Assembly (NCBI RefSeq): GCF_001194135.2
Contig: NC_068982.1
Location: 129,827,534 to 129,891,533, forward strand
Source of the DNA: Octopus bimaculoides
Lineage: Eukaryota
Reading direction: 5' to 3'
DNA length: 64,000 nucleotides
The translations under genes and the position numbers were made by a program. Of the stretch, positions 1,471 to 61,620 are shown piece by piece. Numbering within the stretch: the stretch's first letter is position 1; the number at the start of each line of letters is the position of its first letter. The notes under the pieces were generated by a model. That model did no database searches and was not told the origin of the DNA. It saw only the letters and a list, made by a program, of their open reading frames with translations.

Positions 1471-2458
1471 TAATATAAGTTGAAATCAGTAGTTCTCAGT
1501 AAGTTCAAGGAATTCTTTGATATATGGTCTCAATGTTTTTCTGGTATCCTTACAACTTTAAACACTTTTTACAAAATGATTTTCTTTTGTTTCACTTCAG
1601 GGATAGATTAGATCAAAAGACCTGGGTACCTTGCATTACACATTTTTATTAGGTATTCATGTAGTTAATATACTGAAAACAAAATATTTGATTTTGATTC
1701 AGTGTTACATTTGTGTGCCAATACTAGGAAACACCAACCGTTTAAAGATATAATTTCATAATTTGAACCACAAAGTTGAGAGATCTTACAGGAAACCCAC
1801 TTTTGAGTTGTAATGATTACATTGGAAACTAAAATTTTCTTTCAAAGAATGTAACTATTTGTAAAGAGTTTCAATGCAGTTATTTTTCCTATGTTGAAAG
1901 TTATTTGGTGCTTCAACATCTCTAATGAAAATACTACACATTATCCAGATTGATACTGCTATCTTAGCAATTAAAACACTTCCATTCCTCACACACATAT
2001 TCATAAATGTAAAATTACTTTTGAACAGATCCTTTCTGTTCACAAAAGAAAACTTTTCTAAATATTTCCCCCCCACTTCAATAAGTTCAGGTTAAATAAT
2101 CAAAATATTTTACCCATCAACTGAATCATCAATGTGGTCCATTGTTTTATAGTTAGTCTGCAATGGTTGTTACACTCGAGAACTTAAAGATTGTTGGGTA
2201 GCCAGTATTACATCTGGTTGATCAGAAAGAACTAAATGAACAACATGGGCTGAATGTTAATTAGCCTAAACTGTTTTTGTTGGTGTTTTGTTAACACTGC
2301 AAATATAACATACCAGGTCACTTAGCAAGTAGCTTGTCAATCATAAAATCTACAATGAAATGTTATTTACCAAATGTTTTTATCTTTCTTTTAACTCTTG
2401 AGAATTTAATCATCCTATTAAACGTCTGTTTCCATCTCATTTATTTGCAAATTATTAA

Positions 2459-2677
2459 CCCTTTCATTACCATATTTCCAACGAAATACACCAGCTGCAT
2501 TTCAATTAAGTTTGAATAAAGAATGTAAGAAAATAATTTTGTTTTTATTAATTAAGCTGGTGTTTGGAACAAATTAAAATAAAATTTTGGTGAAAGGTTT
2601 TAATTTACATCACTTTAAAATTAGAGGTTTCTATCATAGACCTAGAGGCTCTCTCTGGCAAGCTAGTATCAAAAGGG
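2459..2677. mobile_element. piggyBac-type MITE
   Basis: TTAA|CCCTTTCATTAC ... GTATCAAAAGGG|TTAA. A related left end occurs near 1035. Confidence 0.7.
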
Positions 2678-3179
2678 TTAATGTATGGTTCACAGAACTG
2701 AACCAAATGGGCCACAAAAATGGTTGTGGGTGGATGAGAGCATTTAGGCTATTGCATAATCTGTCTGAACAAAGTCAGATGCAGCTCTCTGATGGACATT
2801 TTGTCTATTACAGCTATTATTATTGATATTACAGCTATTATTGTTGATATTATTATTATCATTATTGTTGTTGTAATCATTTGTGTTATAATTGTTGGGA
2901 ATTACTGATGAGGAACAAATAGTCTTAAAAAAAGTGAAATCTTTTAAATTTCTGAATATATGTCTATATTCTGAGACATAGACACTCTGGAGAAGGAAAG
3001 TATGGAAGCAGAAAGATCTCTCAACCAGATATAGCTTGAAAGATGCACTGAGTAATTAGGAGATAGAAACTTAAGACATAGAAGAAAACCTAAGTTTCTG
3101 AAACAACTACCTGTGAGCCACAAACCAGATCTATGGATGGAGAATGAGTGAATCAAGCAGATATGGTGGTAGAATAGTA

Positions 3180-7442: not shown

Positions 7443-7619
7443 TATTTTAAATTACATTTATAATATCTAACTTGCACCAATGATTTCATAGCTTTAGGAT
7501 TGAAACAAAATAAAATTGCCGCTCAATAATATGACTATCAACTGATCAGATGTACACTTTGTCTGCTTCAAGCCACAGAAAACTGGGAAAATATGGCCCA
7601 GCAATGCATTTTATCACAT

Positions 7620-8225
7620 TGGTGAATTTCATCAATGAAAGAATGCCATCATTACTGCTGTTTGGGGATGAATGCTCAGAGAGTGTTACCACTAGAATAA
7701 GAATAGCCTGGGCAAAGTTTAGAAAGCTTCTACCCCTACTGGTGACAAAGGGCCTCTCATTCAGAGTGAAAGGTAAACTGTACAATGCATGTGTGCGAAC
7801 TGCCATGCTTTACGGTAGTGAAACATGGGCCGTGACTGCGGAGGATATGTGTAGGTTCGAAAGAAATAAAAATCAAAATAAAAATCAAATGGAAATTGTA
7901 ATTTGTGATACCCGTACTGGTGGCATGTAAAAAGCACCATCTGAACGTGGCCGATGCTAGTGCTGCCTTGACTGGCTTCTGTGCCGGTGGCACATAAAAA
8001 GCACCAACCGATCGTGGCTGTTGCCAGCTCCCTTTGGCCTTGTGCCGGTGGCACGTAAAAAGCACCCACTACACTCATGGAGTGGTTGGCTTTAGGAAGG
8101 GCATCCAGCTGTAGAAACACTGCCAGATCAGACTGGAGCCTAGTGCAGCCTCCTGGCTTCCCAGACCCTGGTCGAACCGTCCAACCCATGCTAGCATGGA
8201 AAATGGACGTTAAACGATGATGATG
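7620..8225 (+). mobile_element. RTE LINE 3' fragment with tandem-unit 3' UTR and GAT tail
   Basis: RIRIAWAKFRKLLPLL...KGKLYNACVRTAMLYGSETW, then GGTTGGC.TTAGGAAGGGCATCCAGC...GGACGTTAAACGATGATG. Confidence 0.85.
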
Positions 8226-8368
8226 AATATTTTTCTTCAGATTTTTTTTTTTTTTTTGTAATTTACAGACTTAACTGTTCATTGAAAGTATATTAACCAG
8301 AGCAGTTAGTTCTTTCAAAAGATAACAGAGAAATATAATATATTCTTTTAAAAAGTTAATAAACTTAC

Positions 8369-26490: not shown

Positions 26491-27002
26491 CAATGATGAT
26501 GATGATGATATCTTTGTAATTAAAAAAAATCCTAGTTGTTTTCTTCCATTGTGCAGCAGCATGGGCCAAGTGTCAACACAACCTTAAGAGCAAAATTGGA
26601 AAGACAGAAATAATGAGGAGGCCCCTTGGATGGACTGTAACTATAATTCAAAGAATCTCATGCTGATTCTGCTTGAGAATTACACTAATGGTACAAGTGT
26701 TTGCAAAATATTAAGCAACTTTCACTATAATGATGAATAGGAAGTATCCTTGAGTGAACAACTGGGACATTCGGAATTAAAACTTATACAAGATTCATTA
26801 TCATCTCATTTGTGTGTATGGTTTGTGTAGAATTGAATGTCTTGTGGGTGAATTATTTTTAATCTTAGAAACACAAACTTTCTTTTACAACATTATAGAG
26901 TTTAGGGAAATTATTTTGCAATAATCGATCTTAGAATCTTTGTCAACTTATGATGATAATGGCAATGATGATGATGATGGTGGTGGTGATGATGATGATG
27001 AC

Positions 27003-27322
27003 NNNNNNNNNNNNNNNNNNNNNNNNNNNNNNNNNNNNNNNNNNNNNNNNNNNNNNNNNNNNNNNNNNNNNNNNNNNNNNNNNNNNNNNNNNNNNNNNNN
27101 NNNNNNNNNNNNNNNNNNNNNNNNNNNNNNNNNNNNNNNNNNNNNNNNNNNNNNNNNNNNNNNNNNNNNNNNNNNNNNNNNNNNNNNNNNNNNNNNNNNN
27201 NNNNNNNNNNNNNNNNNNNNNNNNNNNNNNNNNNNNNNNNNNNNNNNNNNNNNNNNNNNNNNNNNNNNNNNNNNNNNNNNNNNNNNNNNNNNNNNNNNNN
27301 NNNNNNNNNNNNNNNNNNNNNN
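27003..27322. other. Assembly gap (320 N) within a (GAT/GGT)n tract
   Basis: N run. Confidence 1.
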
Positions 27323-28135
27323 ATGATGATAATGGCAATGATGATGATGATGGTGGTGGTGATGATGATGATGACAATGGTGTTGATGATGATGGTGGTG
27401 GTGATGATGATGATGATGATGATGACGATCATGATGATGATGATCATCATCATCCTCATCCCCATTATCATCGTCATAATCATCATCAATATCATTATTA
27501 TCCTCAGCAGCAGCAGTAGCAGCAGCAGGCACTATTTAAATAATCATCAGCAGTCTAAAGTGAAATTTTAGAAAGGTTTATATTTTTCTTCATGCCTTAT
27601 CATTCTCATATTCTCCCAAATTCTTATTTCTTTATTGCCCATAAGGGGCTAAACATAGAGGGGACAAACAAAGACACACAAAAGGATTAAGTCAATTACA
27701 TCGACCCCAGTGCATAACTGGTACTTAATTTGTCAATTCTGAAAGGAAGAAAGGCAAAGTTGATCTCGGCGGAATTTGAACTCAGAATGTAAAGACAGAC
27801 AAAATACCGCTAAGCATTTCACCTGGCATGCTAACGTTTCTGCCAGCTCGCCGCCTTATTCTCCCAAATTCTTGAGCCACAATTTGTTGTTTACATAAAT
27901 CATTTGATGATGACTCAACAAATTTATTTATTCAGCAATCTATATTTTATGACATCACAGGTCAGTTTGATGTTATGCAAACTGAGAATGTTGTTTTTGT
28001 GACTTTTCATGTCCTTACTTTTTATTGATATTTTATAGTATTCCTAAAATTGTGTGTTTTCTTAAAAATATTATTTCCTAAAATTGTGTGTTTTCTTAAA
28101 AATATTATTTGTTAATGAATGTATTTCCAGTTTAA

Positions 28136-28914
28136 CCCCTTGCCTGTCTAAATCATTTTCAAAAGTTTGACCTAAATGTCCATGCTTGTTTTCAGAATTT
28201 TAGTTAGCCCTTGTTTTATACCTTCCGTATAATTGTTGTGTCGATGCCCCCAGGCAAAGAAGTAGGATCTCCCAAGACATATAAATAGAGGTAGTCTGGC
28301 CATGGTAGAGTGCTGAGTAACAGTTGAATAGCAGTCGAGTAGCAGTTGTGTAGCGGTTGAGTAGAGATCATCCGAAAGTGTTAGATAGCAGTAGCTTGAG
28401 ACATAACAGTGGCGACGAGGATGAGATGGATATATGGTATGATTTGTTCAAGGTCCCAGAACCACAAGCGAAAGCGGAACCGACACATAGGTCGAGTAAG
28501 AAGAGAAAACCGACAGAAATAATGGAAATAAATGATAAGAGAAAAAGATATGCCAGTTTCTCACTGAGGAAATAAAATTGATAAATTGTTTTTTTTTTTT
28601 TTGTGAAAAAAGAAAAACTCAAAAGGGGGAGGTATTGTGTCGACGGCCCCAGGCGAAGAAGTAGGATCTCCCAAGACATATAAATAGAGGTAGTCTGGCC
28701 GTGGTAGTGTGTTGAGTAGCAGTTGAGTGGCAGTTGTGTAGCGGTTGAGTAGAGATCATCCGAAGGTGCTAGATAGCAGTAGCTTGAGACATAACAGTAA
28801 TATAAAGCTTTCCAAGATGCTCTGGGAGTTGAAAAAAATTGGGAATGTGTGTCATATATGATACATGGATACCAGGAAAATACATCCTGTGTATAATATG
28901 TGATGCACAAAGGG
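28136..28914. mobile_element. TTAA-flanked piggyBac-type MITE hosting the TRIM
   Basis: TTAA at 28132-28135 and 28915-28918; termini CCCCTTGC.../...CACAAAGGG. About 216 bp once the TRIM is removed, matching the size of the other TTAA MITEs here. Confidence 0.6.
28234..28796 (+). mobile_element. Miniature non-autonomous LTR retroelement (TRIM-like)
   Basis: Direct repeats 28234-28408 and 28633-28796 with TGTT...AACA termini. PBS TGGCGACGAGGATG at 28410-28423, PPT AAAAGGGGGAGG at 28621-28632, TATAAATA in each LTR, 224-bp internal region, and a 5-bp TSD ATAAT/GTAAT with one mismatch. Confidence 0.88.
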
Positions 28915-29050
28915 TTAAGAATAGGTACTGCATTCCCAGATGTGGAAAGAATGACTAAAACTGAAACATGTACATGCTGAAAAAAAGAAAAGAATAATAT
29001 TACTCATTCGCTTATATTGTTTTTTCCCATTCATATATTTATATAGTGAA

Positions 29051-29369
29051 GGCACATGGCTTAGTGGTTATGGTATTTGGCTCATGATCATAAGATTGTG
29101 AGTTCAGTTCCCGGTGACACATTGTGTCCTTGAGCAAGACGCTTAATTTCATATCATTCCAATCCACTCAGGTGGCAAAAATGAGTAGTACCTGTATTTG
29201 AAAAGACCAATCTTGTCACTCTGTGTCACACTAAATCTCCCTGAGAACTATGTTAAGGGTACACGTGTCTGTGGAGTGCTCAGCCACATGCATGTTAATT
29301 TCAAGAGCTGGCTGTTTTGTTGATTGGATCAATTGAAACCCTCATCATCATAACCGATGGAGTGCCAGT
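29051..29369 (+). mobile_element. tRNA-derived SINE (family C)
   Basis: TGGCTTAGTGG (A box), GAGTTCAGTTC (B box) and a TGTGTCCTTGAGCAAGAC body. Homologous to the mariner-split copy. Confidence 0.75.
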
Positions 29370-31079
29370 TATATTTTTATATGAATAGATTTTTTTTATG
29401 CCCCCTGCATCAAATATGTCAGTGTTGATTAAACTACTGTTTTGTATGTGAATAACAATGCTTCTGAATTATTTATTTCTAAACAATTTATTTTTTCAAA
29501 CTGACCGCTTGTGCATTTACTCTAAAATTTATGTTATTTCTTCAGCAAGTATAATAAAATCTAGTCTTTTCTAATAGTCAGAATAAGAAGGAAATATGTA
29601 CATAGTTATCTTCCCCCAGTTCCTGTAAAATAAATGAACAAAATAATATTGATTACTTACATAGGTCAAAGGCTTGAAATTTGACAATAAGATTGACACT
29701 AATACCCAAAATAATATTAGTTATTGACTTACTGTTTTTCGTTCACCACATTTGTAATTTTAAATATTCTGTTAGTACTATAAATATTTAACTGGCATGG
29801 CAAAGAGATTAAGAAGTTTGCTTTGACCCTGGTTTCAATTCCTGGGAGTTGTGGAGCACCTTGGGTAAATGTCTTCAGCATCACCATTAGTTGACTTGAA
29901 CTTATGAGTAAATTTTGGTAGATCAAAACTGTGTAGAAGCCCTCTCAGATGAATTATTTCTGTAATTCAAGTCCAGCTTTATCACATTTTTGTGCTGACT
30001 CTGCTTATGAAGTATGGCTGGAATACTCAGTCATTTACATGTGAATTTCACAGGTCAGAGATTTTGTTGATTAAAGAAATAAACACTTGTTTTGGGGACA
30101 TGGAGAATCCATCAGGGTAACACTAAATTAACTTTTTTTGGTGTCATACACTTTCAAATTCTAACATCATCCTTGAAATTTGATAGGTATCAGAATTTGT
30201 TGGATTACAGGTATTTATGTAATTAATTATCTAATCATTTTTAAATGGTTGGTCCAGATTATAGCAGAAGGCACTTGATCAAGGTTCCATGCAGGGGGAC
30301 TGAACCTGAAGCCATGGAGTTGGAAAGCAAACTTTTTAACCACAGCCTGCACCTAATATTTACAGAAATATTTGGTTTCAAAATAACATTTTCTTTTTAA
30401 ACATAGAAATGTAGTTTTGAAATGACGTAGTAGAGGTGGAAAGGAATAAGAGACTGTGTGGAATACATATTTTACCTTCCCAAGAGTAGTTGAAAAATAA
30501 CAGGAGTAGTTTTAACTCTGTGCTAACCTTGGCATAAGTTCATTTTGGGAAAAATAAGACAAATAATAAAGTACAAATGAAATCACTTGATGAATATTGC
30601 AACATAAGTGATTCAGTTGGCTGACTGTAGAATTAACCATTTTTTTTGTTACAGAATTGAAAGGCATTATTCATTGAAGCAAAGCTAAAGTGGACATTTG
30701 TTCCAATGTTTTATTCTGCTAATATTCTCAGAATAATAAAACAGTAGCATATTAGTGCACACAGCAATTTTCTAGTATGTCAATATGGCTTCCATGAAAA
30801 CAACATTGTCCATATTCTCAGGTTTTTCTTACTTCAAACGAAAAAAAAAAAAATGAAAAGCTTAAGGTAGATTGTTAAATATTTTACTAAGATTTCAGTA
30901 AATATTTTAGAACTGACTTTTTTTTTTATGAAAGTAACAATGAAAATTTTATGTTTTGAAAAGAAAAACATTCAAATACTAAATACTCTCTCAAACACTG
31001 CAAGATACTTTGAATTCTAAACATTTGTTTACAATAAGAAAAGAACAATGTGTTTGTTGTTGCATGTGTGTGTGTGTGT

Positions 31080-31960: not shown

Positions 31961-32144
31961 TATTAATGGTGTGAAACTGAGTATTACCAGTTGGTTGATA
32001 ACTGATGAAGAATTATGGACCTTCTGTGTTTGTCTCCCATAACTTATACTGAGTGTACAACTGGACGGGAGACAAACACAGAAGGTCCTTAATTCTTCAT
32101 CAGTTATCAACCAATTGGTAATACTCAGTTTCACACTATTAATA
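31961..32144. repeat. Near-perfect hairpin: 78-bp arms and 28-nt loop, extended by (TG)n/(CA)n
   Basis: Arms 31961-32038 and 32067-32144 show 3 mismatches by manual alignment. Confidence 0.9.
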
Positions 32145-33180: not shown

Positions 33181-33737
33181 CAGCTTGTTTGTGCTTTCCA
33201 GCCCATTTATACACATTTGAAGTGTAGCTGTTACTTGTAAATGAGTATGACCTGTTAGCTCACCACTATGCTTTTGTTAATTGTTTTAGGTAGCTGTGTA
33301 GTCAAAAGCAGATATAGACATCCTGCTGGGCCTCCCACTCTCATTGACAAAGAGGAATATCATGAAGGAGTTTGATGATTGGAGGGAAAGAAGGCTGCAC
33401 CAGCAATTGGCTAGTATCTATTTTTAGCTATGTAGATTGGAGATATGTGAAGTAAAGGGCCTTGGCAAAAGACACCCAAAGTTGCCTGGTCCAAGAATCA
33501 AACCTACTACATCATATACCTTCATACACACACACACACACACACACACACATGCACACACACATGCATGCACGCACACACATGCACTCACACACGCGCA
33601 CACACACACTCTTTCACATTCACACACATGCATACACATATGTATGTGAGTTTGAGGTTTTCTATTATAGTTACAATAATGATGATGATGATGACAGCTG
33701 AGTTTATTGTATACAGTGGTCAGATGGTGTATATATA

Positions 33738-34289
33738 NNNNNNNNNNNNNNNNNNNNNNNNNNNNNNNNNNNNNNNNNNNNNNNNNNNNNNNNNNNNNNN
33801 NNNNNNNNNNNNNNNNNNNNNNNNNNNNNNNNNNNNNNNNNNNNNNNNNNNNNNNNNNNNNNNNNNNNNNNNNNNNNNNNNNNNNNNNNNNNNNNNNNNN
33901 NNNNNNNNNNNNNNNNNNNNNNNNNNNNNNNNNNNNNNNNNNNNNNNNNNNNNNNNNNNNNNNNNNNNNNNNNNNNNNNNNNNNNNNNNNNNNNNNNNNN
34001 NNNNNNNNNNNNNNNNNNNNNNNNNNNNNNNNNNNNNNNNNNNNNNNNNNNNNNNNNNNNNNNNNNNNNNNNNNNNNNNNNNNNNNNNNNNNNNNNNNNN
34101 NNNNNNNNNNNNNNNNNNNNNNNNNNNNNNNNNNNNNNNNNNNNNNNNNNNNNNNNNNNNNNNNNNNNNNNNNNNNNNNNNNNNNNNNNNNNNNNNNNNN
34201 NNNNNNNNNNNNNNNNNNNNNNNNNNNNNNNNNNNNNNNNNNNNNNNNNNNNNNNNNNNNNNNNNNNNNNNNNNNNNNNNNNNNNNNNN
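33738..34289. other. Assembly gap (552 N) within (TA)n
   Basis: N run. Confidence 1.
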
Positions 34290-34329
<40 letters not shown>

Positions 34330-36961: not shown

Positions 36962-37595
36962 GCATCATTATCATCATCATCGTTTAACATCTGCTTTCCA
37001 TACTGGCATGGGTTGGACAGTTTGACTGGGGACTGGTGAGCCAGATGGCTGCAACAGGCCCCAGTCTGATCTGGCAGAGTTTCTACAGCTGGATGCCCTT
37101 CCTAATGCCAACCACTCCAAGAGTGTAGTGGGTGTTTTTACGTGCCACTGGCACGAGAGCCAGTCAGGCGGTACTGGCAACGGCCAAGCTCAAATGGTGT
37201 TTTTACATGTCACCTGCACAGGAGCCAGTCCAGCGGCACTGGCAACGCCCTCGCTCAAATGCTGTTTTTCACGTGCCACCGGCACAAGCGCCAGTAAGGT
37301 GATGCTGGTAATGATCATGCTCGAACGGTGCTTTTTACATGCCACTGGCACGGGAGCCAGTCAGTGGCCCTGGCAACGAGCATGGATCCCAGTCATGCTG
37401 TGTTGTCATTGAATTTGATTTCGATTTCACTTGCCTCAACAGGTCTTCGCAAGCAGAGTTTAGTGTCCAATGAAAGAAAGGTACGCCTAAGTGGGCTGGT
37501 TACACCACTGGCATAGGCCATGGGTTAGGTCTCACTTGGTTTGCTGGGTCTTCTCAAGCACAGCACATTTCCAAAAGTCTCGGTCACTAGTCATT
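36962..37595 (-). mobile_element. RTE 3' end (last codons MTSDRDFWKCAVLEKT plus tandem-unit UTR)
   Basis: Same tail family. The ORF end aligns with the C-terminus at about 47830-47880. Confidence 0.8.
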
Positions 37596-40378: not shown

Positions 40379-41734
40379 TGATTTCCTTTCAGTTCTTCCT
40401 CACATGACTTTAGTCAGCCTGAAGCTAGAGAAGAAGATGCCCAAGTGTTAAACAGTGAGATTGAACCTGAAAACTTATGCTTCTAGGTTCATTTTACTTG
40501 ATATATTAGATGAAGTTGAGTGACAGAGTGATTATATATGATTCATTGAATAAAGTTGAGTGACAAGCTGATTATGACTCATTCTATGAGTTTGATGGAT
40601 AAGAAGTCATGGGATCTGAGAATTAGACTCAGAATATAAAAGGGACGGCTAAATACCACAAGGTATTTTATCTAGAGCTCCAGTAATTCTGCAGTTCGCT
40701 ACTATTATCTAATGTGTCCAAGGACTGCAACATGCTCCAAAACAGACGCTGGAGCACAATGCAGTCCTTGAACACATCAGATCTTGTCAAACCATCCAAG
40801 TCATACCTGTATGAAACACAGATATCAAATGATAATGATGATGACGATAATGATGATGAAAACAATAATAACAATAATAATAATTTCTCATTTTAACTCA
40901 AATTTAGTGATTTTGAGGGGAGTGAATAAGTTGATTACATCGACCCCAGTGGTCAGCTGGTACTTATGTTATCAAGCATAAGAGGATGAAAGGTAGAATA
41001 GATCTCAGCAGAATTTGAACTCAGGACATAAAGAATTAGAAGCACCTCTAAGAATTTTGTCTGATGTTCTAACGCTTCTGTTAGTTTTCTGCCTCACTAC
41101 AACTTCTAATAATACTTTCAAATTTTGTTGCAAAGCCAGTAATTTTAATGAGAGAGGGTTTGTTGATTACATCAACTCTAGTGCTCCATACCACAGATTT
41201 GCTTGTCATTTGCTTAACCATAACTGGTTGAGTATATCCCTTAAAAGCTGTCAATATGTACTGCTCTGATCACAAGCAGGAGTAGTGGGGCAGCATCATA
41301 GCCATGTGTCGAGAGGAATTCTTTAGGAGTTGAATGATTCACCCCTGGGAACATGGCTATTTTGTATATGATCCTTGACAACCATTATTCAGGGACCTTT
41401 TGAGCAAGATGGGCTATTCGACCTGAAGAAAATTCTAACTGGGCCCCCACCTGCAAGGTCATGCACTGATTATCTTGATATGAGGTCACCATGTCGTACA
41501 CATATGGTTGTGATGCATGTGCCTGGTGTACCCTTATCAGTTGACCAGTCATGGTGGGTATATTGGGCTTCATATATCACTGTTTTCCTTTGGTTGGGTT
41601 GTAAGAAGATATACCCTGCCCTAAAAAACAGGATCATAACAGTTTTTGTAACTTACTCTTGCTAATGGATGAATATTATACTGTTGAAAACATATAAGAA
41701 AGGAAATTAATTCACCCTATACACATGTGTATCT

Positions 41735-42040
41735 TTTGCAAGCGAGTTTGCTGCCAGTACTGCTGGACTGGCTCCTGTGCAGGTGGCACGTAAAATACAC
41801 CATTTTGAGTGTGGCCATTGCCAGTACCTCCTGACTGGCCTTCGTGCCGGTGGCACGTAAAAGCACCCACTACACTCTCGGAGTAGTTGGCATTAGGAAG
41901 GGCATCCAGCTGTAGAAACTCTACCAAATCAGATTGGAGCCTGGTGTAGCCATCTGGTTCACCAGTCCTCAGTCAAATCGTCCAACCCATGCTAGCATGG
42001 AAAGCGGATGTTAAACGACAATGATGATGATGATGATGAG
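41735..42040 (+). mobile_element. RTE tail copy
   Basis: Same tail family, ending in (GAT)n. Confidence 0.8.
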
Positions 42041-43656
42041 ACATTGACTAATGACAAATACAGCAAGGTACCATCTCCATATCACCAAAGGAGACAAAGT
42101 GTTGAGAAAGGGAGTAAATTTCTTGTAGCAACTAACATTGTGTGAATGAGACAGAATGATGGTGAGGATGACGATGAAAATAATAGTGATGTTTATTTTA
42201 GGTTCTTAGAACACAATTAGTTGCTAGCTCTAAGCAAGTGGTTAGTCAAGATTAGTAAATAGATAGAACAGACATTGTATTATGCTCCAAGAATAGTTCA
42301 ATAAAGAGACAATTTTTTTTGCTACCAACTGCTTGTCTTGGAGTTAATTGCTGTGAGGTAACAAGTAGTCATGATCTATGATTAATTAGAAAATAAAGAT
42401 ATGTTGATCTAATTAAATGTCGTTAATCAGTGGGACATAGCTTGTAGGATTTTGATGAAGCATGGTGTGGTGTTACAAGTTAGAGAATAGAATTTTGTTG
42501 ATAAAAAGATGTTTAATTAAAAGTATATTTCCATTTGAATGTAAATTATGTATGAAGCTGCTTAAAATTTTAAGAGGCATAATATGGAAAATGTGACATT
42601 TATTGGCTTTCTTTATGTTATAATGAAGTGAAATAATTGCAATCAAAAATGTGTTTCAATTAGCTGGTTGGTTAATCAGGGCGCTCACATTTCAGCTGAA
42701 ATGTTGCTTGCTTATATTGTCACCAACACTGTTCTGTCCTTGAAAATAAAAAAAGACATTTAAATTACTGTTTTATGTAATGGCTGATATTAGGAATTAT
42801 AAAGAAAAATGAAAACCATTTTCTAATACTTATAGAATTCAAGAATTAATTTCAGTTACTCAATAGCAAATTTTATAAAAATAGAACTAATTTATGACAT
42901 ATGGACATACTAATTACTTATTGTCATTTAGAAAGAGAGATACTATTTTCAGTTGTTAGTGTAATTCCTGAATTACAAAATATAGTCAAAAGAAAGATGG
43001 AAAAAAGAGAATGCCCAAATTCTAATTTTTTAACAATCAAATTCAAGTTTGCAGAGTTTTGTAACTCAGAAATTGTAAACTGATCCAGAATGTCATATGA
43101 ATAATTGATTAGTAATATTGGTTTCAAATTTTGGCACAAGGTCAGCAGTTTCAGCAGAGGGAAATAGTTGATTACATTGACCCCATTGCTCAAATAGTAC
43201 TTATTTTATCGGCCTTGAAAGGATGAAGAGCAAAGTCAATCTCAGCAGGATTTGAACTCAAAATGTAAAGATGTACAAATGCTGCTTAGCATTTTGCCTG
43301 GTGTGCTAATAATTCTGGCTTTAATTGAGCAGTGATATTGTGAAGGTATGTGACATAATGGTTTGGGCCTTAGGCTCATGATTGTTAAGGTTGTGAGTTT
43401 GATTCTTGGACTGGGGTACACATTGTGTCCTTGAACAAATACACTTCAATTGATGTTGCTTTAGTTCATTCACCTGAAATGAGTACTAATGACAACTGCA
43501 AATATTAACCCTGCAACAGACTAGCAATTGGCATCCTGTTCAGTAAATTATGTACTCTCAGTTGCTTAAACACCATAAAAAATTGTAATTAACTCTGGTC
43601 TTTTGAGCTTTTAGGCTTGAGACATTTTTTTCCTAACTAGTAACATTTCTTGCAAA

Positions 43657-45266
43657 GGCACATGGCTAAGTGGTTAGGTTATTCAGCTCATGATTATAAA
43701 GCTACGAGTTTGATACCTGGTGGTGAGTTGCATCCTTGAACATAACAATTTATTTCATGTTGCTTCAGTCCATTCAGCTGGCAAAAATGGGTAGTACCTA
43801 TATTTCAAAAGGCCAGCTTTATCACATACTGTGTCATGCTGAGTATCCTGAGAACTATTGGGTTGGCAACTAAGTTCCTGCCATTTAAAAAAATTTTGGA
43901 ATTTATTGCGTTTTTAAATTTTGGAATCTATTTTTTTCGAGAATTCTATTTTTGAATCATTTTGGAATCTATTTTTTTCTAGTTAATTTTAGTTAATTTT
44001 TGTTTATTTTCAGATCATTAAAATGGAATGTCAAGTTTAGAAAAATGAGCATTTTTGACACCTCTTTTTTGCTTTTAATCAAGGTTCTAAGGTCGCAAAA
44101 GCTGCTTGTGACATTTGTGCTGCATATGGAGAGAGTGCCATAGCTGAAAGAACCACTCGTGATTGGTATGTCAAGTTCAAAAATGGAAATTTTGACCTCA
44201 AACACGCACCTCGTTCTGGCTGTCCAGTTGAGATCAATGAAGAGCAATTAAACCTTAAACCAACTTTTGCATGAAAATTCTCATCAAACAACAAGGGAAC
44301 TGGCAGAGAAAATGGAATGCTCCCACACCTGTTATAGAGAAGCATCTTCACTCGATGGGTGAGGCTCAGAAGTATGGAGCATGGGTTCCGCATGCTTTAA
44401 GTAACAACAACAAAAATCAACAAGCCACAATCTCTGTTGGTTTGCTTGCTCATCACCGCACAACTCATGGACACAAGCAAGAATTTCTTTACCGAATTGT
44501 TACTGGCGACAATAAATGGTACCTGTACATCAATATGAAGCAGTGTAAGGAATGGCTTAACCCCGGTAAACAAGTGACACCGCGCGTGAAACAAGATCTT
44601 CATCTGCGTAAAACGATATAAGTATGGTGGGACTGGGAAGGGATTATCCATTATGAATTGCTTGAACAGAACCAAACAGTCAACACGGAACTCTATGTTC
44701 AACAGATGGAGTGACTCAACACAGCTATTCAAGAGAAAAGACCTAATTGGCAGCATGGAGTTCTGCTGCACAACAACGCCCGCCCTCATATCGCCAATAT
44801 GACCAAGGAAGCCATTCAAACGCATGGCTGAGAAGTGCTGCCACACCCGCCATACTCTCCTGATTTGGCACCAACGGATTTCCACCTCTTTCAATCGCTT
44901 TCATATGCTATACGCAGAGTTTCGTTCAATACTGATGCAGAATTGAGAGCTTGGCTGGATTATTTTTTCGAGTCGAAATCAGGTGATTTCTACCAACGAG
45001 GTATTGAAAATCTTGTTGAACGTTGGGAAGAAGTTCTAAACAACAAGGGTGAATACATTATTGATTAATTAGTTGTTATTTTTTATTAAACCTTTTAAAA
45101 AATTTAAATTAAAAAAAAACAGCAGGAAATTAGTTGCCAACCCAATACATTAAATGTACATATGTTTGCAGAGTGTTCAGCCACTTGCACATTAAGTTCA
45201 CAAGCAGGCTGTTCCATTGATTGGATCAACTGGAACCCTCATTGTCATAACCGGTGGAGTGCCACT
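43657..45266 (+). mobile_element. tRNA-derived SINE (same family as 29051-29369) split by the mariner
   Basis: The 5' half 43657-43857 and the 3' half 45148-45266 join at GAGAACTA|CATTAA to give a sequence colinear with the intact copy at 29051. Confidence 0.8.
43858..45145 (+). mobile_element. Full-length (1288 bp) defective mariner (DD34D) transposon
   Basis: 24-bp TIRs with 23/24 identity (TTGGGTTGGCAACTAA[G/T]TTCCTGC) and TA duplication at 43856-57 and 45146-47. Transposase remnant 44023-45068 shows WVPHAL, IVTGDNKW, LHNNARPH and HPPYSPDLAPTD, with stops and frameshifts. Confidence 0.95.
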
Positions 45267-45599
45267 TAATTAGCTAGTGACATTGCTAGTGGTGTTTGAA
45301 AAGTATGTCATAAAGAATAACACTGAATATATAAAAAATACTACCTAGATGATGCAAGCACTTGTTCTACAGTTTGTTTTGATAATCTAATATCACAGAT
45401 GTGAAGTGTAGAGCCGTTGTTTTTTTTATTATTCAGAATGTTTGAATATTCTTTAATATTTTTCATTTTTTATTTCACTAGGCTTCAGCTGAAAGAAGGA
45501 GATCAGTCTTTCCATTAAATTTGCAGATTCTCTTGGATTGGTGAGATTAGTGGAATTAACTTTCCTCTTGAAAAGATGCAAGTCGACAAAAGTAGGAAA

Positions 45600-46639: not shown

Positions 46640-48196
46640 TGCTATTTTACCACAGCTGCTAAAAAAGTATTTGGTCAAAAGTAAGCCACTGTACTTAGTT
46701 TCTGTTGACCTGGAGAAAGCCATCGGTAGAGTGTCCACTCTGTTATATGGTGGTCTCTAAGGAAGCTAGGAGTAGAGGAATGGCTTATTAGAGCTGTACA
46801 AGCTATGTACAGTGGTGATATCAGTAAAGTGAGAGTCAGACATGAATACAGTGATGAATTTAGTGTACAAGTAGGGGTTCACCAGGGCTCAGTTCTTAGT
46901 CCACTCTTATTCACCATAGTCCTCCAAGCCATAACAGAGGAATTAAAAACTGGATGCCTGTGGGAATTATTATATGCTGATGACCTCACGCTCTTATTGC
47001 AGAATCTAAAGTAGAATGGGAGAAGAAATTCCAGGTATGGAAGCAAAACCTGGAATAAAAGGGCATTAAAGTTAAACTAGTAAAGTTGTTAGCAAGAAAG
47101 CAGACAAGACTTTCTTTCTGTCAGGTAAACAGCCCTGTTCAATATGTAGGAAAGGAGTGGGAAATAATTCCATTTGCTGCACCCAGTGTAAGCTATGGAC
47201 ACATAAGAGGTGCAGTGGAATCACAGGTAGATTACCAAATAGGGCCACCTTCTTGTGTGGCTGATGTGCAGGAACGATAAGCACTAAAAGCACACAGGAC
47301 TTAGAATCTTCAAAATGCCCAGGGAGTAGATAGTTTCTGTTACATAGGTGACCAAATTAGCAATGGTGGTGGATGCTCTGAAAGTAGTTTCTAGAATAAG
47401 AATAGGATGGAGGAAGTTCAGAGAGCTATTACCTCTGTTGGCAACAAAAAGACTCTCTCTCAGAGTGAAAGGTAGATTGTATGATGTTTGTGTATGATTG
47501 GCTATACTCCATGGTAGTGAGACATGGGCTCTGAATGCAGAGGACATGCATAGACTAGAGAGGAATGAAAGCAGTATACTCCACTGGATATGCAGCATTA
47601 GTGTGCATGAATAACAAAGCGCAAATGTGTTGAGAGAAAAGTTGGGCATAAGAAGAATCAAATGCAGCATGCAAGAGAGGAGACTAAGTTGGTTTGGGCA
47701 TGTGATGCATATAAATGAAGGCAGCTGTATAAAGAAATGCTTGTCACTGAAAGTGGATAGTACCTGTGGAAAAGGAAGGCCTAGGAAGACATGGGATGAA
47801 GTGGTGAGGGCCAATCTCAGGATGTTGGGCTGACAAAGGAAATGACAATGGACCAAGATGTTTGGTGATATGAGGTTCTGCCCAGATCAGCAAAACCGAG
47901 TTCTAGAAGCATTGTGTCCCATTCACATGTAACAATAAAATTTCACACACCCTACCCCAACAAACCAAACTACATCTCCTCTCCCAAACAGTGTCTTTTA
48001 TCTTCCTCGCATTTCCTCTGAATACACTATGACTATCTCCCACTCTAAGGTGGTTGGCATTAAAATGAGCATCCAGCTGTAAAAACCATGCCAGAACAGA
48101 CAAAGTCTGGTGCAGTCTTCTGCCTGGTCAGCTCCTGTCAAACCGTCCAACATATGCCAGCATGAAACACAGACAGTAGATGGTGGTGATGATGTA

Positions 48197-53588: not shown

Positions 53589-55829
53589 TCATTGCAAGAA
53601 GCTCTCTAGTTCAGAATCTCGTTTCTTCTTTTTGGAGGATTTTGGCCGGGATAATACCTTCGGGTGATGCAAAGATTTCATCATCTTGCAGGTTTTAGAC
53701 CTAAGTGCTTGAGCTGCACCTTCTGGAGTGTATGCTAGAAAAACACCTGTAAGATCAACATCTACACAGGTTTCTTTGTGCTTTTCAAGCATAGGAGTAT
53801 GTTTACGCATGTTATTACCAGTGTAAGCAACACATTTCAGTTGCCATTCACCTATGTCATCATTCCAATGTACATAATGTTCTATCACATTTTGAAACTC
53901 TGGAGGGATAAAGTTGTCAATGACAAGCATCTGTAACTTCAGTTCACGAGTTAGTTGTCTTATATTCTCTAAAAGGCCTTCCATTTCTCTCTGATGTTCT
54001 TGTTGAAGATCAGCCATCTCAGATTTGGCTTGCATCAACATTGTCCAACACTTTTTCAACTTTTTTGTTTTTCCTACAATTTCATCTTGTAAAGAAGAAT
54101 ATTTTTCTTCAATATCAATTCTTTCCTGTTCTTTCTCTTCAAGAGCTCTTCGTAATTCTTCTTCTCTTTTTTTACGTTCTTCTAACTCAATAGCACTCTC
54201 TCCGAGAAGGCGTTCTTGTTCTTCAGCTTTCTCTAAAAGATTTTCACCACCAACAATTATCTTTTTTTCAATTGCTGACAATTTTTGCTGAAGTTGATCT
54301 TGTTCTTCTTGATAACGCTTCAACTCATTTTCTTTTTCATCCAAACTTTCCTTCATTTGGTTGCGTTCTTCTTCAGCCATGTCTTTCTTCTCTTCTAAGA
54401 ATTTTCGATCATTTTCAATTTTAGTGAGGATTTCAGTCATTTTTTCTTTAGATATTTTACGGCATTTTTTTTCTTTCCATTTCTTTTTACTATTCTCCAT
54501 AAATTCCATACTTTGCTCATTATCCATTTCTTCATCTGGGCTAGTATCTCCATCTGATATATTATCTTCAAGTTGTTTCTTCAGTTCCTCAATTTCCTTT
54601 TGAAATTGTCTTAAAAGTGCATCTTTAGGATCTTCATTAATTTTAGCTTTGTTTTTAATATTCTTAGCGCGGTTAGCGTACCTTAAAGTACTGATTGTCT
54701 CATCATAATTATAGTCAGCAGGCCCAATATTAGCAATCATTATAGTTTTCGAGTTACCTCCTAAAGAATCTTGTAAAAGTCGAGTAAGTTTTGAATTTCT
54801 ATATGGAATATGACTACTTTTCCCATCAACTAATGCAGAAATGACATTACCAAGTGTAGATAAAGAAAGGTTAATTTTAGACGCTTCTTTTAATCTCATT
54901 CCAGTGGCACCTGTCTTGGCCTGTCTTTCAGAACCGGCAAGATCTACAAGATGTAGCTTCCCCATTCGGACATGCTGTTTTCCATCAATTCCTTTCACAC
55001 TGCATTCTACAGTAACAGTGAAAATAGCATGGGACCTAGAGCTATGGGCATTCATATTGGTAGCACCAACCGCGCGATTTTTATTACCGAGAGTCATTAT
55101 TCTATCCATATCATCAGCATTATTCACTACAAATGCAGACAAATCCTTAACGTAGACACCAACATCGGGCCGTTCTTTGACTTCTAATCGCATGTTTTGA
55201 TCTTTTGCAAGCAAATCTCGAACTTCTTCATTATATATTTCCATGTAAGAGACACGAACTAAAAAGCAATTATCTTCACCAGCTTTTGCTATAGCTCCAA
55301 AGATATGAGCAAATGAATTAGGAATAATACCACGAACCTCAAGCGTTGTCCGTAAGCCTTCCATAGTGAATGTTTTACCTGTGCCTGTCTGTCCGTAGGC
55401 AAAAATGGTGCCATTGTAACCTTCTAAAACACAATCAACAATGGGTCGAGCGACTTCATTATAGACATCAACTTGTTTACACCCAGGTCCAAAAACTGTG
55501 TCGAAAGTAAACATTTTTATGGGTTCCTCTTGGCTTGCCGAGGGGTTTTCCACTGACACTGTACCCCGCAGGACATCGACAGTCACTAGATTACGACATG
55601 AAATCGACAGTTCTTTTTCATTGAGCGGACGACAACGGACGGCCACTCGCACATTATCAGAGTCTTTGCTGTTGTTGCTACTGCTGCTACGCGAAGTAGA
55701 ACTATGATTACTTGTAGTAGCCGAGGCAGAGCTGTTGCTGGTTATTATAGGACTGGAATTGGTTGTACAACTTGTGTTGTTACTGAAGAGACTTTGGTAT
55801 GAACTGCTGGTATTCTTGTTTTCAGGCAT
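53589..55829 (-). CDS. KIF3A: Kinesin-2 motor subunit KIF3A (KRP85-like), 746 aa, intronless CDS
   Basis: First ATG at 55829 (MPENK); the track start at 55850 is TTG. Motifs: GQTGTGKT P-loop, [34 protein letters not shown] and a coiled-coil stalk. The tail [26 protein letters not shown] is characteristic of KIF3A rather than KIF3B/C. Confidence 0.96.
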
Positions 55830-59899: not shown

Positions 59900-60430
59900 T
59901 AGGTTCAATTTCTTGAAGTCAGTCTTCATTGCTTCATTCCATATCTTTCTAGATTTCCTCTTTTCACAGGTTCCACCCTCTTCCAATGATTGGTGCTTCC
60001 TTATATAGCTGATATCCTCAATACAAATCACATCCTCATACTAGCAGGGTGTTCTCTCTCTCTCTCTTGTACACTACATCTGATTCCTTTTATATCCAGC
60101 TGTGATGTCAACTCATTTGTGCTCTGTTGAACACAAATATTACACATCCAGTGGAGCATGCCCACTTCATTTCTTTCTTGCCATTGCAAATCTTCCACAT
60201 GCAAGGCCTATGTGTCTCACAACCATGCAACATTGCACATTGTACATAAACAATGTGTAATCTACTCTTCACGCTAAAAGAGAAACCTTTTGCTGCCTGC
60301 TTGTGCAACAGGTTCTTGAACTTTTTTGACTCTGTTCCCATTTTGTCTATTATACCTTCAGCATGCCCTCCTCCACTTCTAATTATGTTGCCTTGGTAGC
60401 AAAAGTTATAAGCTACTTCTAACGAGCCTA
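59900..60430 (-). mobile_element. Degraded RTE LINE fragment
   Basis: SLEVAYNFCYQG...GGG...KGFSFSVKSRL...AMLHGCET and RKIWNEAMKTDFKKLNL. Confidence 0.7.
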
Positions 60431-61620
60431 TAGAATGAAAGATAGATAGACACACACATACATTCATTCATATTTTATGTACTCCATGTAAATATATATC
60501 AAGCTTAACTGTGTTTATCTTCATTACTATCTCTATATACATACATACATATATATATGTATTCTACAATTGACTATTTTTAAAGTCAGGTACTTATTCT
60601 ATCAGTCTTTTTTGTTCAGTCTGTAAGTTACAGGAACATAAACAAACCAACACTGGTTGCCAAGTGGTGTTGATGGTGGTGGAACGAACTTTGACACAAA
60701 GTCATACGCACATATAATACATACACACATGCTCACCACACACACATAGATACTTGTGTATGTGTATGTATGTTTTGTGTGTTGAGTAATGAACGTGTAG
60801 AATATTTGCTATGTGAATTTGCATAGAAACTGTATTGGGTGATTTGCACTGTTGAACTGAAAGTGTCTTGCAAAGATGCTGCTTGTGCCTTATAGAATTC
60901 TGTTATTGGACTATGTTTAGAGTTGTAAGCCCTGGTATTATTTCATGTTATTGTTCATGATTTAAAAATTTTTTATATAGTTACTATCATTGCCACTCTG
61001 TTTACTCTCATAATAACAATAATTCATTATAAATGAAAAAAAAGAAATGACTTAAATCAAATATTTGCTACAGTTACAGAATGATATTGGGAGAGAAGGG
61101 TGGTGTACTCTTTAAGAGGAAAATAATGGCTTCAAAATTTGGCACAAGGTCAGCAAGTTCGGGGATGGGGGTAAGTTGGTTACATTGACTCCAGTGCTGA
61201 ACTGGTACTTATTTTATAGACCCTGAAAGGACGAAATGCAATGTCAACTAAAGTGGAATTTGAACTCAGAGCGTAAAGATGGAAGAAATGCTTCTATGCA
61301 GTTGGCCTGGTGTGCAAACAGTTCTGCCAGTTTGCTGCTTTAATAATAATTATTACAACTTTATTATCCTTAAGCATTCATGCACTGTACTCTGTCAGAA
61401 TCATTCAATAACTGTAAAATGGAGTAGATTTGCTTTTCAAAAAAGAATTATAGTGTTTTACGTAGAATAAAAGTAATTTAGAGAAGCGCTATTGTCTGGA
61501 TGTCACTAGAATTTTACTACCATTTGTAACAGCTGCAGCAATAATGGCTTAGTGAAAAGTTGATACAAATAATAGAACAAGGGGCATAACTACAGAACTG
61601 TGTCTCACCACCAAGTTTAT

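What the first reader, a model, noticed from the sequence alone, without database searches (positions are those of the whole stretch)
28234..28796. A 563-bp TRIM: miniature LTR retroelement with intact priming signals, nested in a TTAA MITE
Seen: two LTRs (175 and 164 bp) with 9-bp inverted termini (TGTTGTGTC / GACATAACA) and a TATAAATA box. A PBS TGGCGACGAGGATG sits 1 nt after LTR1, a PPT AAAAGGGGGAGG abuts LTR2, and the TSD is 5 bp (ATAAT/GTAAT). Only 224 bp lie between the LTRs, containing a 49-aa basic ORF (28426-28575) but no gag/pol motif. Known: the PBS is complementary to the 3' end (...ATCCTCGTCG-CCA) of metazoan tRNA-Ser(GCU), recalled as the primer type of Mag-like Ty3/gypsy elements. 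TRIMs are common in plants and reported only sporadically in animals. Inference: this is a trans-mobilised TRIM family of a Mag-type partner, and I do not recall one described from cephalopods. The insertion postdates the host piggyBac-type MITE (28136-28914).
Basis: partly seen in the sequence, partly recalled or inferred. Interest (0 to 1): 0.8.

Follow-up and report, generated by a model that had tools for sequence, protein, structure and literature searches.

The report
Miniature deleted gypsy retroelement in octopus
This is a real 563-bp miniature LTR retroelement in the Octopus bimaculoides genome, an old stripped-down derivative of a gypsy-type retrotransposon; whether it ever multiplied as a family could not be tested here.

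Summary
The window is Octopus bimaculoides chromosome CM046602.1. It carries two LTRs of 175 and 164 bp (93% identical, plus one 11-bp indel). It also has TG..CA ends, a 14-nt site matching the 3' end of tRNA-Ser(GCU), a polypurine tract abutting LTR2, and a 4/5-matching 5-bp target duplication.

The new result concerns the "49-aa basic ORF". It is not a novel gene. It is the last 49 codons of the pol (integrase) reading frame of a Ty3/gypsy element. Two diverged relatives on Logan contigs of unidentified species carry the same tail (78-79% nt identity). There it sits behind RT, RNase H and integrase domains and ahead of a PPT and an LTR starting TGTTGTRT.

The internal region is therefore PBS fused to the 3'-terminal ~210 bp of an autonomous element. 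The junction is a 4-nt microhomology (GATG) inside the PBS. This is TRIM anatomy produced by one deletion, most likely a reverse-transcription strand-transfer error.

None of the available tools can search the octopus genome, so family status is untested. No second copy lies in the 64-kb window. The "Mag-type partner" and the "piggyBac MITE host" are plausible but weakly supported. It is an ordinary, well-preserved transposable-element relic of modest interest.

The parts
28132..28135 (+). TTAA flanking the putative host MITE (left)
   Evidence: Sequence reading.
28136..28233 (+). Left arm of the putative piggyBac-type MITE (CCCCTTG...)
   Evidence: only 6/7 terminal match to the reverse complement of the right end. 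No other copy in the window.
28229..28233 (+). Upstream target-site duplication ATAAT (or 4-bp TAAT, 28230-28233)
28234..28408 (+). 5' LTR, 175 bp, TGTTGTGTC...GACATAACA
   Evidence: blastn E 7e-61 against LTR2.
28280..28287 (+). TATAAATA box in the 5' LTR (second copy at 28679-28686). A similar ATATAAAT sits in the LTR of relative L003.
   Evidence: Promoter function is inferred.
28314..28364 (+). 11-bp tandem array (4.6 units) inside the LTR. LTR2 has one unit fewer (28711-28752).
   Evidence: TRF; alignment.
28410..28423 (+). Primer-binding site TGGCGACGAGGATG, complementary to the 3' end of tRNA-Ser(GCU) including CCA
28420..28425 (+). Deletion junction. GATG (28420-28423) is both the last 4 nt of the PBS and the first 4 nt of the pol-tail homology (relatives read GATGAG-CCA-ATGG).
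   Evidence: blastn homology starts at 28420.
28426..28575 (+). 49-codon ORF, a relic of the C-terminal tail of the pol/integrase frame of the parent Ty3/gypsy element, ending at the pol stop codon
   Evidence: It is 73% aa identical to the end of P0002 and 55% to P0001; nt identity is 78.0% to L003 and 78.7% to L002.
28576..28620 (+). 3' untranslated stretch with a T14 run and an A-rich tract upstream of the PPT
   Evidence: A-rich equivalents in L002 and L003.
28621..28632 (+). Polypurine tract AAAAGGGGGAGG abutting the 3' LTR
   Evidence: Relatives read AAATGGGAGG (L003) and GAAAAAGCGGAG (L002) at the same place.
28633..28796 (+). 3' LTR, 164 bp. Its first dinucleotide has mutated from TG to TA.
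28797..28801 (+). Downstream target-site duplication GTAAT (or TAAT, 28798-28801)
28797..28914 (+). Right arm of the putative MITE (...CAAAGGG)
28915..28918 (+). TTAA flanking the putative host MITE (right)

Best explanation
The 563-bp unit is a dead, non-autonomous derivative of a Ty3/gypsy LTR retrotransposon with TRIM-like anatomy.

Structure (shown). Its internal region has two pieces: the first 14 nt of the tRNA-Ser(GCU) primer-binding site, and the last ~210 bp of the parent's internal region. That second piece is the final 51 codons of pol/integrase, the stop codon, a short 3' UTR and the polypurine tract. The two pieces are joined at a 4-nt microhomology (GATG).

Origin (inferred). The most likely origin is a single error during reverse transcription. 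Either the plus-strand strong-stop DNA, whose 3' end is the PBS copy, annealed by microhomology to an incomplete minus strand. Or the minus strand switched template from the pol tail to the PBS. The partner's integrase then inserted the short cDNA, making a 5-bp (or 4-bp) target duplication in an AT-rich site inside a probable TTAA-flanked MITE.

Mobility (inferred). With both LTRs, a PBS and a PPT, the element could have been copied again in trans by partner Gag, RT and integrase. tRNA-Ser(GCU) would prime the minus strand and the PPT would prime the plus strand.

Current state. The LTRs have diverged by K2P 0.071, so the insertion is old. Depending on the unknown octopus mutation rate, that is roughly several million to a few tens of millions of years. 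The 3' LTR has lost its terminal TG, which progeny would inherit at both ends.

Open question. Whether the 563-bp form multiplied into a family is untested. My estimate is about 40-45%.
For: - LTR pair, PBS, PPT and TSD are at canonical positions.
- The PBS matches the published tRNA-Ser(GCT) primer 14/14.
- The 49-aa ORF hits one protein among 1.84 billion representatives: P0001, also 49 aa, E 1.8e-7. A profile search then found P0002 (115 aa, E 6.7e-45).
- In P0002 the same tail is read in one frame with the integrase C-terminus.
- On contig L003 the order is RT_RNaseH (PF17917, 1e-11), rve (PF00665, 6.5e-10), tail, stop, A-rich stretch, PPT, then LTR TGTTGTGTTGA.
- L002 carries RVT_1 with a YLDD motif upstream of the tail.
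- DNA homology between the window and L003/L002 runs from 28420 to about 28585 (E 1e-32 and 4e-33). It resumes at the PPT and the LTR start.
- There is no similarity upstream of 28420, where the window has PBS and LTR and the relatives have pol.
- The LTRs of L003 and L002 are about 180 bp. They share the termini TGTTGTRT.GA...(G)ATAACA with the window LTR.
- Microhomology at the junctions of large internal deletions is a recognised signature of RT template switching or MMEJ (PMC13427564).
Against: - The relatives are about 22% diverged in the tail, their LTR bodies barely align with the window LTR, and they come from an unidentified species. The actual parent family of this copy has not been seen.
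- The reverse-transcription origin is an inference from breakpoint position. A genomic MMEJ or slippage deletion would leave the same sequence.
- The window lacks the CCA codon that both relatives have after GATGAG, so the exact junction is uncertain by a few nucleotides.
- No octopus tRNA-Ser(GCU) gene was available. The PBS was checked only against the human sequence.
Confidence: 0.8

Rival explanations
1. One reading: this is one copy of an amplified TRIM family, with many ~560-bp copies sharing the same PBS/pol-tail junction, repeatedly mobilised in trans by a Mag-lineage gypsy partner. This is compatible with the origin proposed above. It adds the claims of amplification and of partner identity.
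For: - Complete TRIM anatomy.
- All cis signals needed for trans-mobilisation are retained.
- A sampling argument (inference): an element met in a random 64-kb window is more likely to belong to an abundant family.
- Gypsy was the only LTR superfamily found by LTRharvest in O. bimaculoides, and the Mag lineage makes up more than a third of mollusc gypsy elements (PMC6238403).
- Mag elements in Culex use tRNA-Ser or tRNA-Leu and have short LTRs.
Against: - No second LTR, internal region or solo LTR in the 64-kb window.
- No close homologue of the ORF or of the antisense frame in the protein collections. These negatives are weak, because octopus non-coding ORFs are barely sampled and the word index missed P0002.
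- tRNA-Ser is not specific to the Mag lineage.
- No RT is linked to this LTR family.
Confidence: 0.42
2. A full-length gypsy element inserted here. It later lost about 4-5 kb of internal sequence in situ, through microhomology-mediated end joining or replication slippage between GATG in the PBS and GATG in the pol tail.
For: - A 4-nt microhomology at the junction.
- The insertion is old (K2P 0.071), which leaves time for deletions.
- Post-integration deletion is considered the main source of defective HTLV-1 proviruses (PMC13427564).
Against: A random genomic deletion would have to place its 5' breakpoint within the last few nucleotides of a 14-18-nt PBS, out of about 5 kb of internal sequence. 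That is of the order of 1 in 1000 (inference). A strand-transfer error puts the junction at the PBS by construction.
Confidence: 0.12
3. It is not a retroelement. It is a local ~399-bp tandem duplication that happens to resemble LTRs.
For: There are two direct repeats 399 bp apart.
Against: - The repeat ends are TG..CA.
- A 14-nt tRNA-Ser match lies 1 nt after repeat 1.
- A 12-nt purine run abuts repeat 2.
- The repeats are flanked by a TSD.
- The spacer is homologous to the 3' end of gypsy pol, PPT and LTR start in independent contigs.
Confidence: 0.01

Closest known systems
TRIMs (terminal-repeat retrotransposons in miniature; Witte et al. 2001). In animals they are reported from Hymenoptera, taeniid cestodes and bivalves (PMC10886601, PMC6934838).
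   Same: Total length under 1 kb, terminal repeats of 100-250 bp, an internal domain that starts with a PBS and ends with a PPT, no mobility proteins, and a short TSD.
   Different: Multi-copy status is not shown here. The internal domain is recognisably the 3' end of a gypsy pol, so it looks like a recent deletion derivative rather than a long-independent lineage.
biv-TRIM of bivalve molluscs (PMC6934838)
   Same: A mollusc host, miniature size, and terminal direct repeats.
   Different: biv-TRIM has no identifiable canonical PBS and no known partner. The octopus element has a canonical tRNA-Ser(GCU) PBS, and its partner lineage (Ty3/gypsy) is visible through the pol tail. No sequence similarity between the two was tested.
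TRIMp3 groups Helenus, Ajax and Cassandra (PMC10886601)
   Same: Non-autonomous LTR elements with a PBS and PPT. Some bivalve Helenus families use tRNA-Ser. TSDs are 4-5 bp.
   Different: Their LTRs carry tRNA- or 5S-derived pol III promoters. An Rfam scan of 27800-29300 at E up to 10 found nothing of that kind in these LTRs, which instead have a TATA box.
Mag-lineage Ty3/gypsy elements (for example the cqgypsy families of Culex, PMC3286476)
   Same: A tRNA-Ser (or tRNA-Leu) PBS, short LTRs (145 to 287 bp in the Culex entries seen, against 164-180 bp here), and 4-5-bp TSDs.
   Different: Lineage is defined by RT/IN phylogeny, which could not be done. tRNA-Ser is also used by errantivirus clades (PMC13524379).
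Internally deleted defective proviruses with microhomology junctions (for example HTLV-1; PMC13427564)
   Same: A large internal deletion between the LTRs with a 4-nt microhomology at the breakpoint.
   Different: This is a retrotransposon of an invertebrate germline. The breakpoint sits inside the PBS itself.

Membership tests
TRIM | Total length under 1000 bp | tested here: met
   563 bp, 28234-28796.
TRIM | Terminal direct repeats of about 100-250 bp | tested here: met
   175 and 164 bp, 93% identical.
TRIM | Internal domain begins with a PBS complementary to a tRNA 3' end | tested here: met
   28410-28423 matches the tRNA-Ser(GCT) primer of PMC9072684 14/14 and is unique in the window. The octopus tRNA itself was not available.
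TRIM | Internal domain ends with a polypurine tract | tested here: met
   AAAAGGGGGAGG at 28621-28632 abuts LTR2.
TRIM | No coding capacity for Gag, RT or IN | tested here: met
   Only a 49-codon relic of the pol tail remains. It has no Pfam domain.
TRIM | Target-site duplication | tested here: inconclusive
   ATAAT versus GTAAT (4/5), or a perfect 4-bp TAAT if the LTR ends ..ACAG. No empty site is available.
TRIM | Multi-copy family mobilised in trans (copies with the same internal region and different TSDs) | not testable with these tools
   No other copy in the 64-kb window. The octopus genome is not searchable. The collection scans found nothing but hold no cephalopod DNA.
Ty3/gypsy-derived element | Homology to an element with RT, RNase H and IN in that order | tested here: met
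   The tail, PPT and LTR start are homologous to L003 (RT_RNaseH then rve then tail) and to L002 (RVT_1 with YLDD).
Mag lineage of Ty3/gypsy (as partner) | RT/IN phylogenetic placement with Mag, SURL and the A/B/C clades | not tested
   No reference set and no protein searches remained. Only the compatible traits are known: tRNA-Ser PBS, ~170-bp LTRs and a 4-5-bp TSD.
TRIMp3 (Helenus/Ajax/Cassandra) | tRNA- or 5S rRNA-derived sequence in the LTR | tested here: not met
   No tRNA or 5S match inside the LTRs at E up to 10.
piggyBac-type MITE (host of the insertion) | TTAA target duplication at both ends | tested here: met
   TTAA at 28132-28135 and 28915-28918.
piggyBac-type MITE (host of the insertion) | Terminal inverted repeats starting CCC...GGG, and multiple copies | tested here: inconclusive
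   Only CCCCTTG versus CCCTTTG (6/7); beyond that 8/15 match. No other copy in the window. A different 227-bp TTAA-CCCTTT...AAAGGG-TTAA unit exists at 2455-2681.

The most novel reading that the evidence does not exclude
The element is one copy of a genuinely amplified TRIM family in octopods. That would be the first TRIM described in cephalopods. It would also be one of the few animal TRIMs with both a canonical tRNA PBS and a recognisable Ty3/gypsy partner lineage. Its PBS-microhomology junction would record how a TRIM can be born in a single strand-transfer error.
Probability: 0.4. Interest if true: 0.4.

Novelty: new member of a known kind. Interest (0 to 1): 0.27.

Why it matters
If copies with the same junction exist, this would add cephalopods to the short list of animals with TRIMs. 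It would also give a clean example of TRIM birth, because the parent sequence (pol tail, PPT and LTR ends) is still recognisable and the breakpoint lies in the PBS. If it is unique, it is simply a well-preserved defective gypsy insertion. In that case it is useful for repeat annotation of the octopus genome and as a dated marker nested in a DNA transposon. Neither outcome changes current understanding of LTR retrotransposition.

Tried and rejected
- Other copies in the window: blastn of the LTRs, the internal region and the MITE arms found only the element itself.
- tRNA genes: none in the window or in loci L001-L003, so the PBS could not be aligned to an octopus tRNA.
- Exact look-ups of the 49-aa ORF and of its 72-aa TTG-start version: not on record.
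- Word-index protein searches with the 49-aa ORF and with the 142-aa antisense frame: nothing. These negatives are weak. P0002 shares five 5-residue words with the ORF and was still missed.
- Exact-pattern scans of the metagenome, GTDB-genome and IMG/VR collections: I used the LTR-end plus PBS, the LTR core, and a degenerate pol-tail pattern. All returned 0. This was expected, because these collections hold no cephalopod DNA.
- Rfam scan for a small-RNA-derived LTR of the TRIMp3 type: nothing relevant.
- Organism of runs SRR11869384-94: no paper mentions them.
- eLife supplement with PBS tables: not held.
- Gag N-terminus hypothesis for the ORF: considered and rejected, because the ORF aligns to the end of pol, not the start of gag.
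- Tandem-duplication origin: considered and rejected.

Full report
**Source.** The 746-aa kinesin ORF at 53589-55829(-) is encoded exactly on CM046602.1 of assembly GCA_001194135.2, near 129.88 Mb. I recognise that accession as the Octopus bimaculoides chromosome-scale assembly; no tool named the organism. It is AT-rich (34% G+C), has gaps of N, and is full of repeats.

**Observation.**
- Everything described is present at the stated coordinates.
- LTR1 is 28234-28408 (175 bp) and LTR2 is 28633-28796 (164 bp).
- Over 164 aligned positions they differ by 9 transitions and 2 transversions (K2P 0.071). They also differ by one 11-bp indel, which is one unit of an 11-bp tandem array inside the LTR.
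- The ends are TGTTGTGTC...GACATAACA, inverted at 8 of 9 positions. LTR2 now starts TA.
- A TATAAATA box lies at 28280-28287 and 28679-28686.
- TGGCGACGAGGATG (28410-28423) follows LTR1 after one nucleotide and is unique in the window.
- AAAAGGGGGAGG (28621-28632) abuts LTR2.
- The flanks are ATAAT and GTAAT. Because both LTR copies are followed by G, a perfect 4-bp TAAT duplication is an equally valid reading.
- A tRNA 3'-end match, a purine run, TG..CA ends and a flanking duplication, all at the canonical positions, cannot reasonably be chance.

**PBS.** A published primer complementary to the 3' end of human tRNA-Ser(GCT) reads 5'-TGGCGACGAGGATGGGATTCG... (PMC9072684). The element matches its first 14 nt exactly, and 17 of its first 18. 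No octopus tRNA gene was available. The assignment therefore rests on the conservation of this tRNA among metazoans, which is general knowledge.

**What the internal region is.**
- The word-index protein search with the 49-aa ORF found nothing.
- The exhaustive HMMER search of 1.84 billion representatives returned one hit, P0001. It is also 49 aa, 55% identical, with E 1.8e-7.
- P0001 lies on Logan contig L002, from run SRR11869384. There the ORF does not follow a PBS.
- In L002 it is the in-frame continuation, after a single stop codon, of an integrase-like C-terminus (...KGQKYERKRHFNQLKKRY...). A reverse-transcriptase fragment with YLDD lies upstream (RVT_1, E 1.4e-8). Downstream come an A-rich stretch, GAAAAAGCGGAG and TGTTGTATGG.
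- A profile of that region plus the window ORF found P0002 (115 aa, E 6.7e-45). It is encoded on five near-identical contigs, L003-L007, from five runs of the same accession series.
- In P0002 the tail MDIWYDIFEVPEPQMKAEPT...KRKRYTNLSLRK* is 73% identical to the window ORF. It is read without interruption from the integrase C-terminus.
- L003 carries, in order, RT_RNaseH (PF17917, 1e-11), rve (PF00665, 6.5e-10), the tail, the stop codon, an A-rich stretch, the PPT AAATGGGAGG, and an LTR starting TGTTGTGTTGA.
- At the DNA level the 150-nt tail is 78.0% (L003) and 78.7% (L002) identical to the window. blastn E-values are 1e-32 and 4e-33.
- The "basic ORF" is therefore the last 49 codons of a Ty3/gypsy pol. 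Positions 28426-28632 are the 3' terminus of an autonomous element's internal region.

**The junction.**
- Homology to L003 begins at 28420.
- The relatives read GATGAG-CCA-ATGGATAT. The window reads TGGCGACGAG-GATG-AG-ATGGATAT.
- GATG (28420-28423) is at once the last four bases of the PBS match and the first four of the pol-tail homology. This explains why tRNA complementarity stops at 14 nt.
- Upstream of 28420 the window has PBS and LTR where the relatives have pol.
- The element is thus LTR, truncated PBS, [deletion of essentially all of gag-pol], pol tail, PPT, LTR, with a 4-nt microhomology at the breakpoint.
- Microhomology at such junctions indicates either template switching during reverse transcription or MMEJ (PMC13427564).
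- I favour a reverse-transcription error, because the PBS copy is the 3' end of plus-strand strong-stop DNA and is the sequence used in the second strand transfer. A mis-annealed transfer therefore places the breakpoint in the PBS by construction.
- A random genomic deletion would hit those few nucleotides only about once in a thousand. This step is inference.

**Partner lineage.**
- The LTRs of L003 and L002 are about 180 bp. They share the termini TGTTGTRT.GA...(G)ATAACA and a TATA-like ATATAAAT with the window LTR, but their bodies barely align.
- The three tails are roughly equidistant from one another (78-81% identity).
- These are three related families of one short-LTR Ty3/gypsy lineage. 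Neither L003 nor L002 is the true parent of the window copy.
- Mag-lineage elements in Culex use tRNA-Ser or tRNA-Leu, have LTRs from 145 to 287 bp in the entries seen, and make 4-5-bp TSDs (PMC3286476).
- Gypsy was the only LTR superfamily LTRharvest found in O. bimaculoides, and the Mag lineage is common in molluscs (PMC6238403).
- tRNA-Ser is also used by errantivirus clades (PMC13524379), and I could not build an RT tree. "Mag-type" is compatible but untested.

**Family or one-off.** This is the decisive question, and the tools cannot answer it.
- No further LTR, solo LTR or internal region lies in the 64-kb window. That says little, because a family would need well over ten thousand copies for a second one to be expected in 64 kb.
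- The public collections that can be scanned hold no cephalopod DNA.
- The protein-based negatives are weak.
That alone does not separate a founder that multiplied from a dead-on-arrival cDNA.
- I put amplification at about 40-45%.

**Present state (inference).**
- The insertion is old (K2P 0.071).
- Three of the nine transitions are CpG/TpG changes.
- The 3' LTR has lost its terminal TG. U3 is templated from the 3' LTR, so progeny would inherit the defect at both ends.
- This copy is very likely immobile.

**Host MITE.** TTAA flanks 28136-28914 on both sides, and the ends read CCCCTTG and CAAAGGG (6/7). Nothing further is inverted, and no other copy lies in the window. A different 227-bp unit at 2455-2681 has the same TTAA-CCCTTT...AAAGGG-TTAA ends. 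That makes a piggyBac-type MITE plausible but not demonstrated.

**Comparison and verdict.**
- The element meets every structural criterion of a TRIM except the untested multi-copy one.
- It is not a TRIMp3 (no small-RNA module in the LTR).
- It differs from biv-TRIM in having a canonical PBS (PMC6934838).
- TRIMs are known from Hymenoptera, cestodes and bivalves (PMC10886601).
- I found no report from cephalopods in the searchable library.
- It is a new member of a known kind: a well-preserved miniature deletion derivative of a Ty3/gypsy element, of modest interest unless genome-wide searches reveal a family.

Noticed in passing
window 53589-55829 (-): A single uninterrupted 746-aa ORF encodes a KIF3B-like kinesin-2. 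The best PDB match is 3b6u, KIF3B motor domain, E 4e-160. It is annotated as a gene in GCA_001194135.2. An intronless kinesin-2 in a repeat-rich region may be a retrogene.
   Followed up: partly
window 29047-29375; also 43335-43438, 43655-43858 and 45150-45268: A tRNA-derived SINE-like repeat lies just downstream of the element (weak Rfam tRNA hit at 29055-29116, 16.7 bits). Its two halves match the window at 43655-43858 and 45150-45268. Those two pieces flank ORFs at 44059-45065 that look mariner-like by eye (PYSPDLAPTDFHLF motif; no Pfam hit). The SINE may have been split by a DNA transposon.
   Followed up: partly
window 2455-2681: A 227-bp unit flanked by TTAA on both sides, with CCCTTT...AAAGGG termini. 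It is a second putative piggyBac-type MITE, unrelated in its body to the one hosting the LTR element.
   Followed up: partly
window 28041-28110: A perfect 34-bp tandem duplication (2.1 copies, 100% identical) lies about 20 bp upstream of the TTAA of the putative MITE.
   Followed up: no
window 46730-47011 (+); also 7535-7927 (+) and 60111-60467 (-): Non-LTR-type reverse-transcriptase fragments. 46730-47011 hits RVT_1 at E 9e-9 and carries a YADD motif. The other two share a ...LYGSETW/...LHGCETH C-terminal motif. A repeat encoding ...LQSDLAEFLQLDALPNANHS... recurs at 7764-8270(-), 37026-37409(+), 41715-41972(-) and 47906-48127(-).
   Followed up: no
L002 (SRR11869384) and L003-L007 (SRR11869384/85/90/91/94): Two decayed gypsy elements, 75% identical to each other, coexist in the same unidentified sample. 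L002 has itself lost RNase H and most of integrase (RT is joined to the IN C-terminus within about 400 bp). L003 has stops and frameshifts in RNase H and IN but keeps the last 115 codons open.
   Followed up: partly
tool behaviour, versus 58: The word-index protein search reported that no candidate shared three 5-residue words with the 49-aa ORF. Yet P0002 shares five such words: MDIWY, DIWYD, VPEPQ, KAEPT and KRKRY. Negative results from that index should be treated as weak evidence.
   Followed up: yes
window about 26990-27330, about 31990-32100, and about 33700-34300: Assembly gaps (runs of N) bordered by microsatellites or low-complexity sequence: CAT/ATG-type repeats, and CA/TG and TA dinucleotide repeats.
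   Followed up: no
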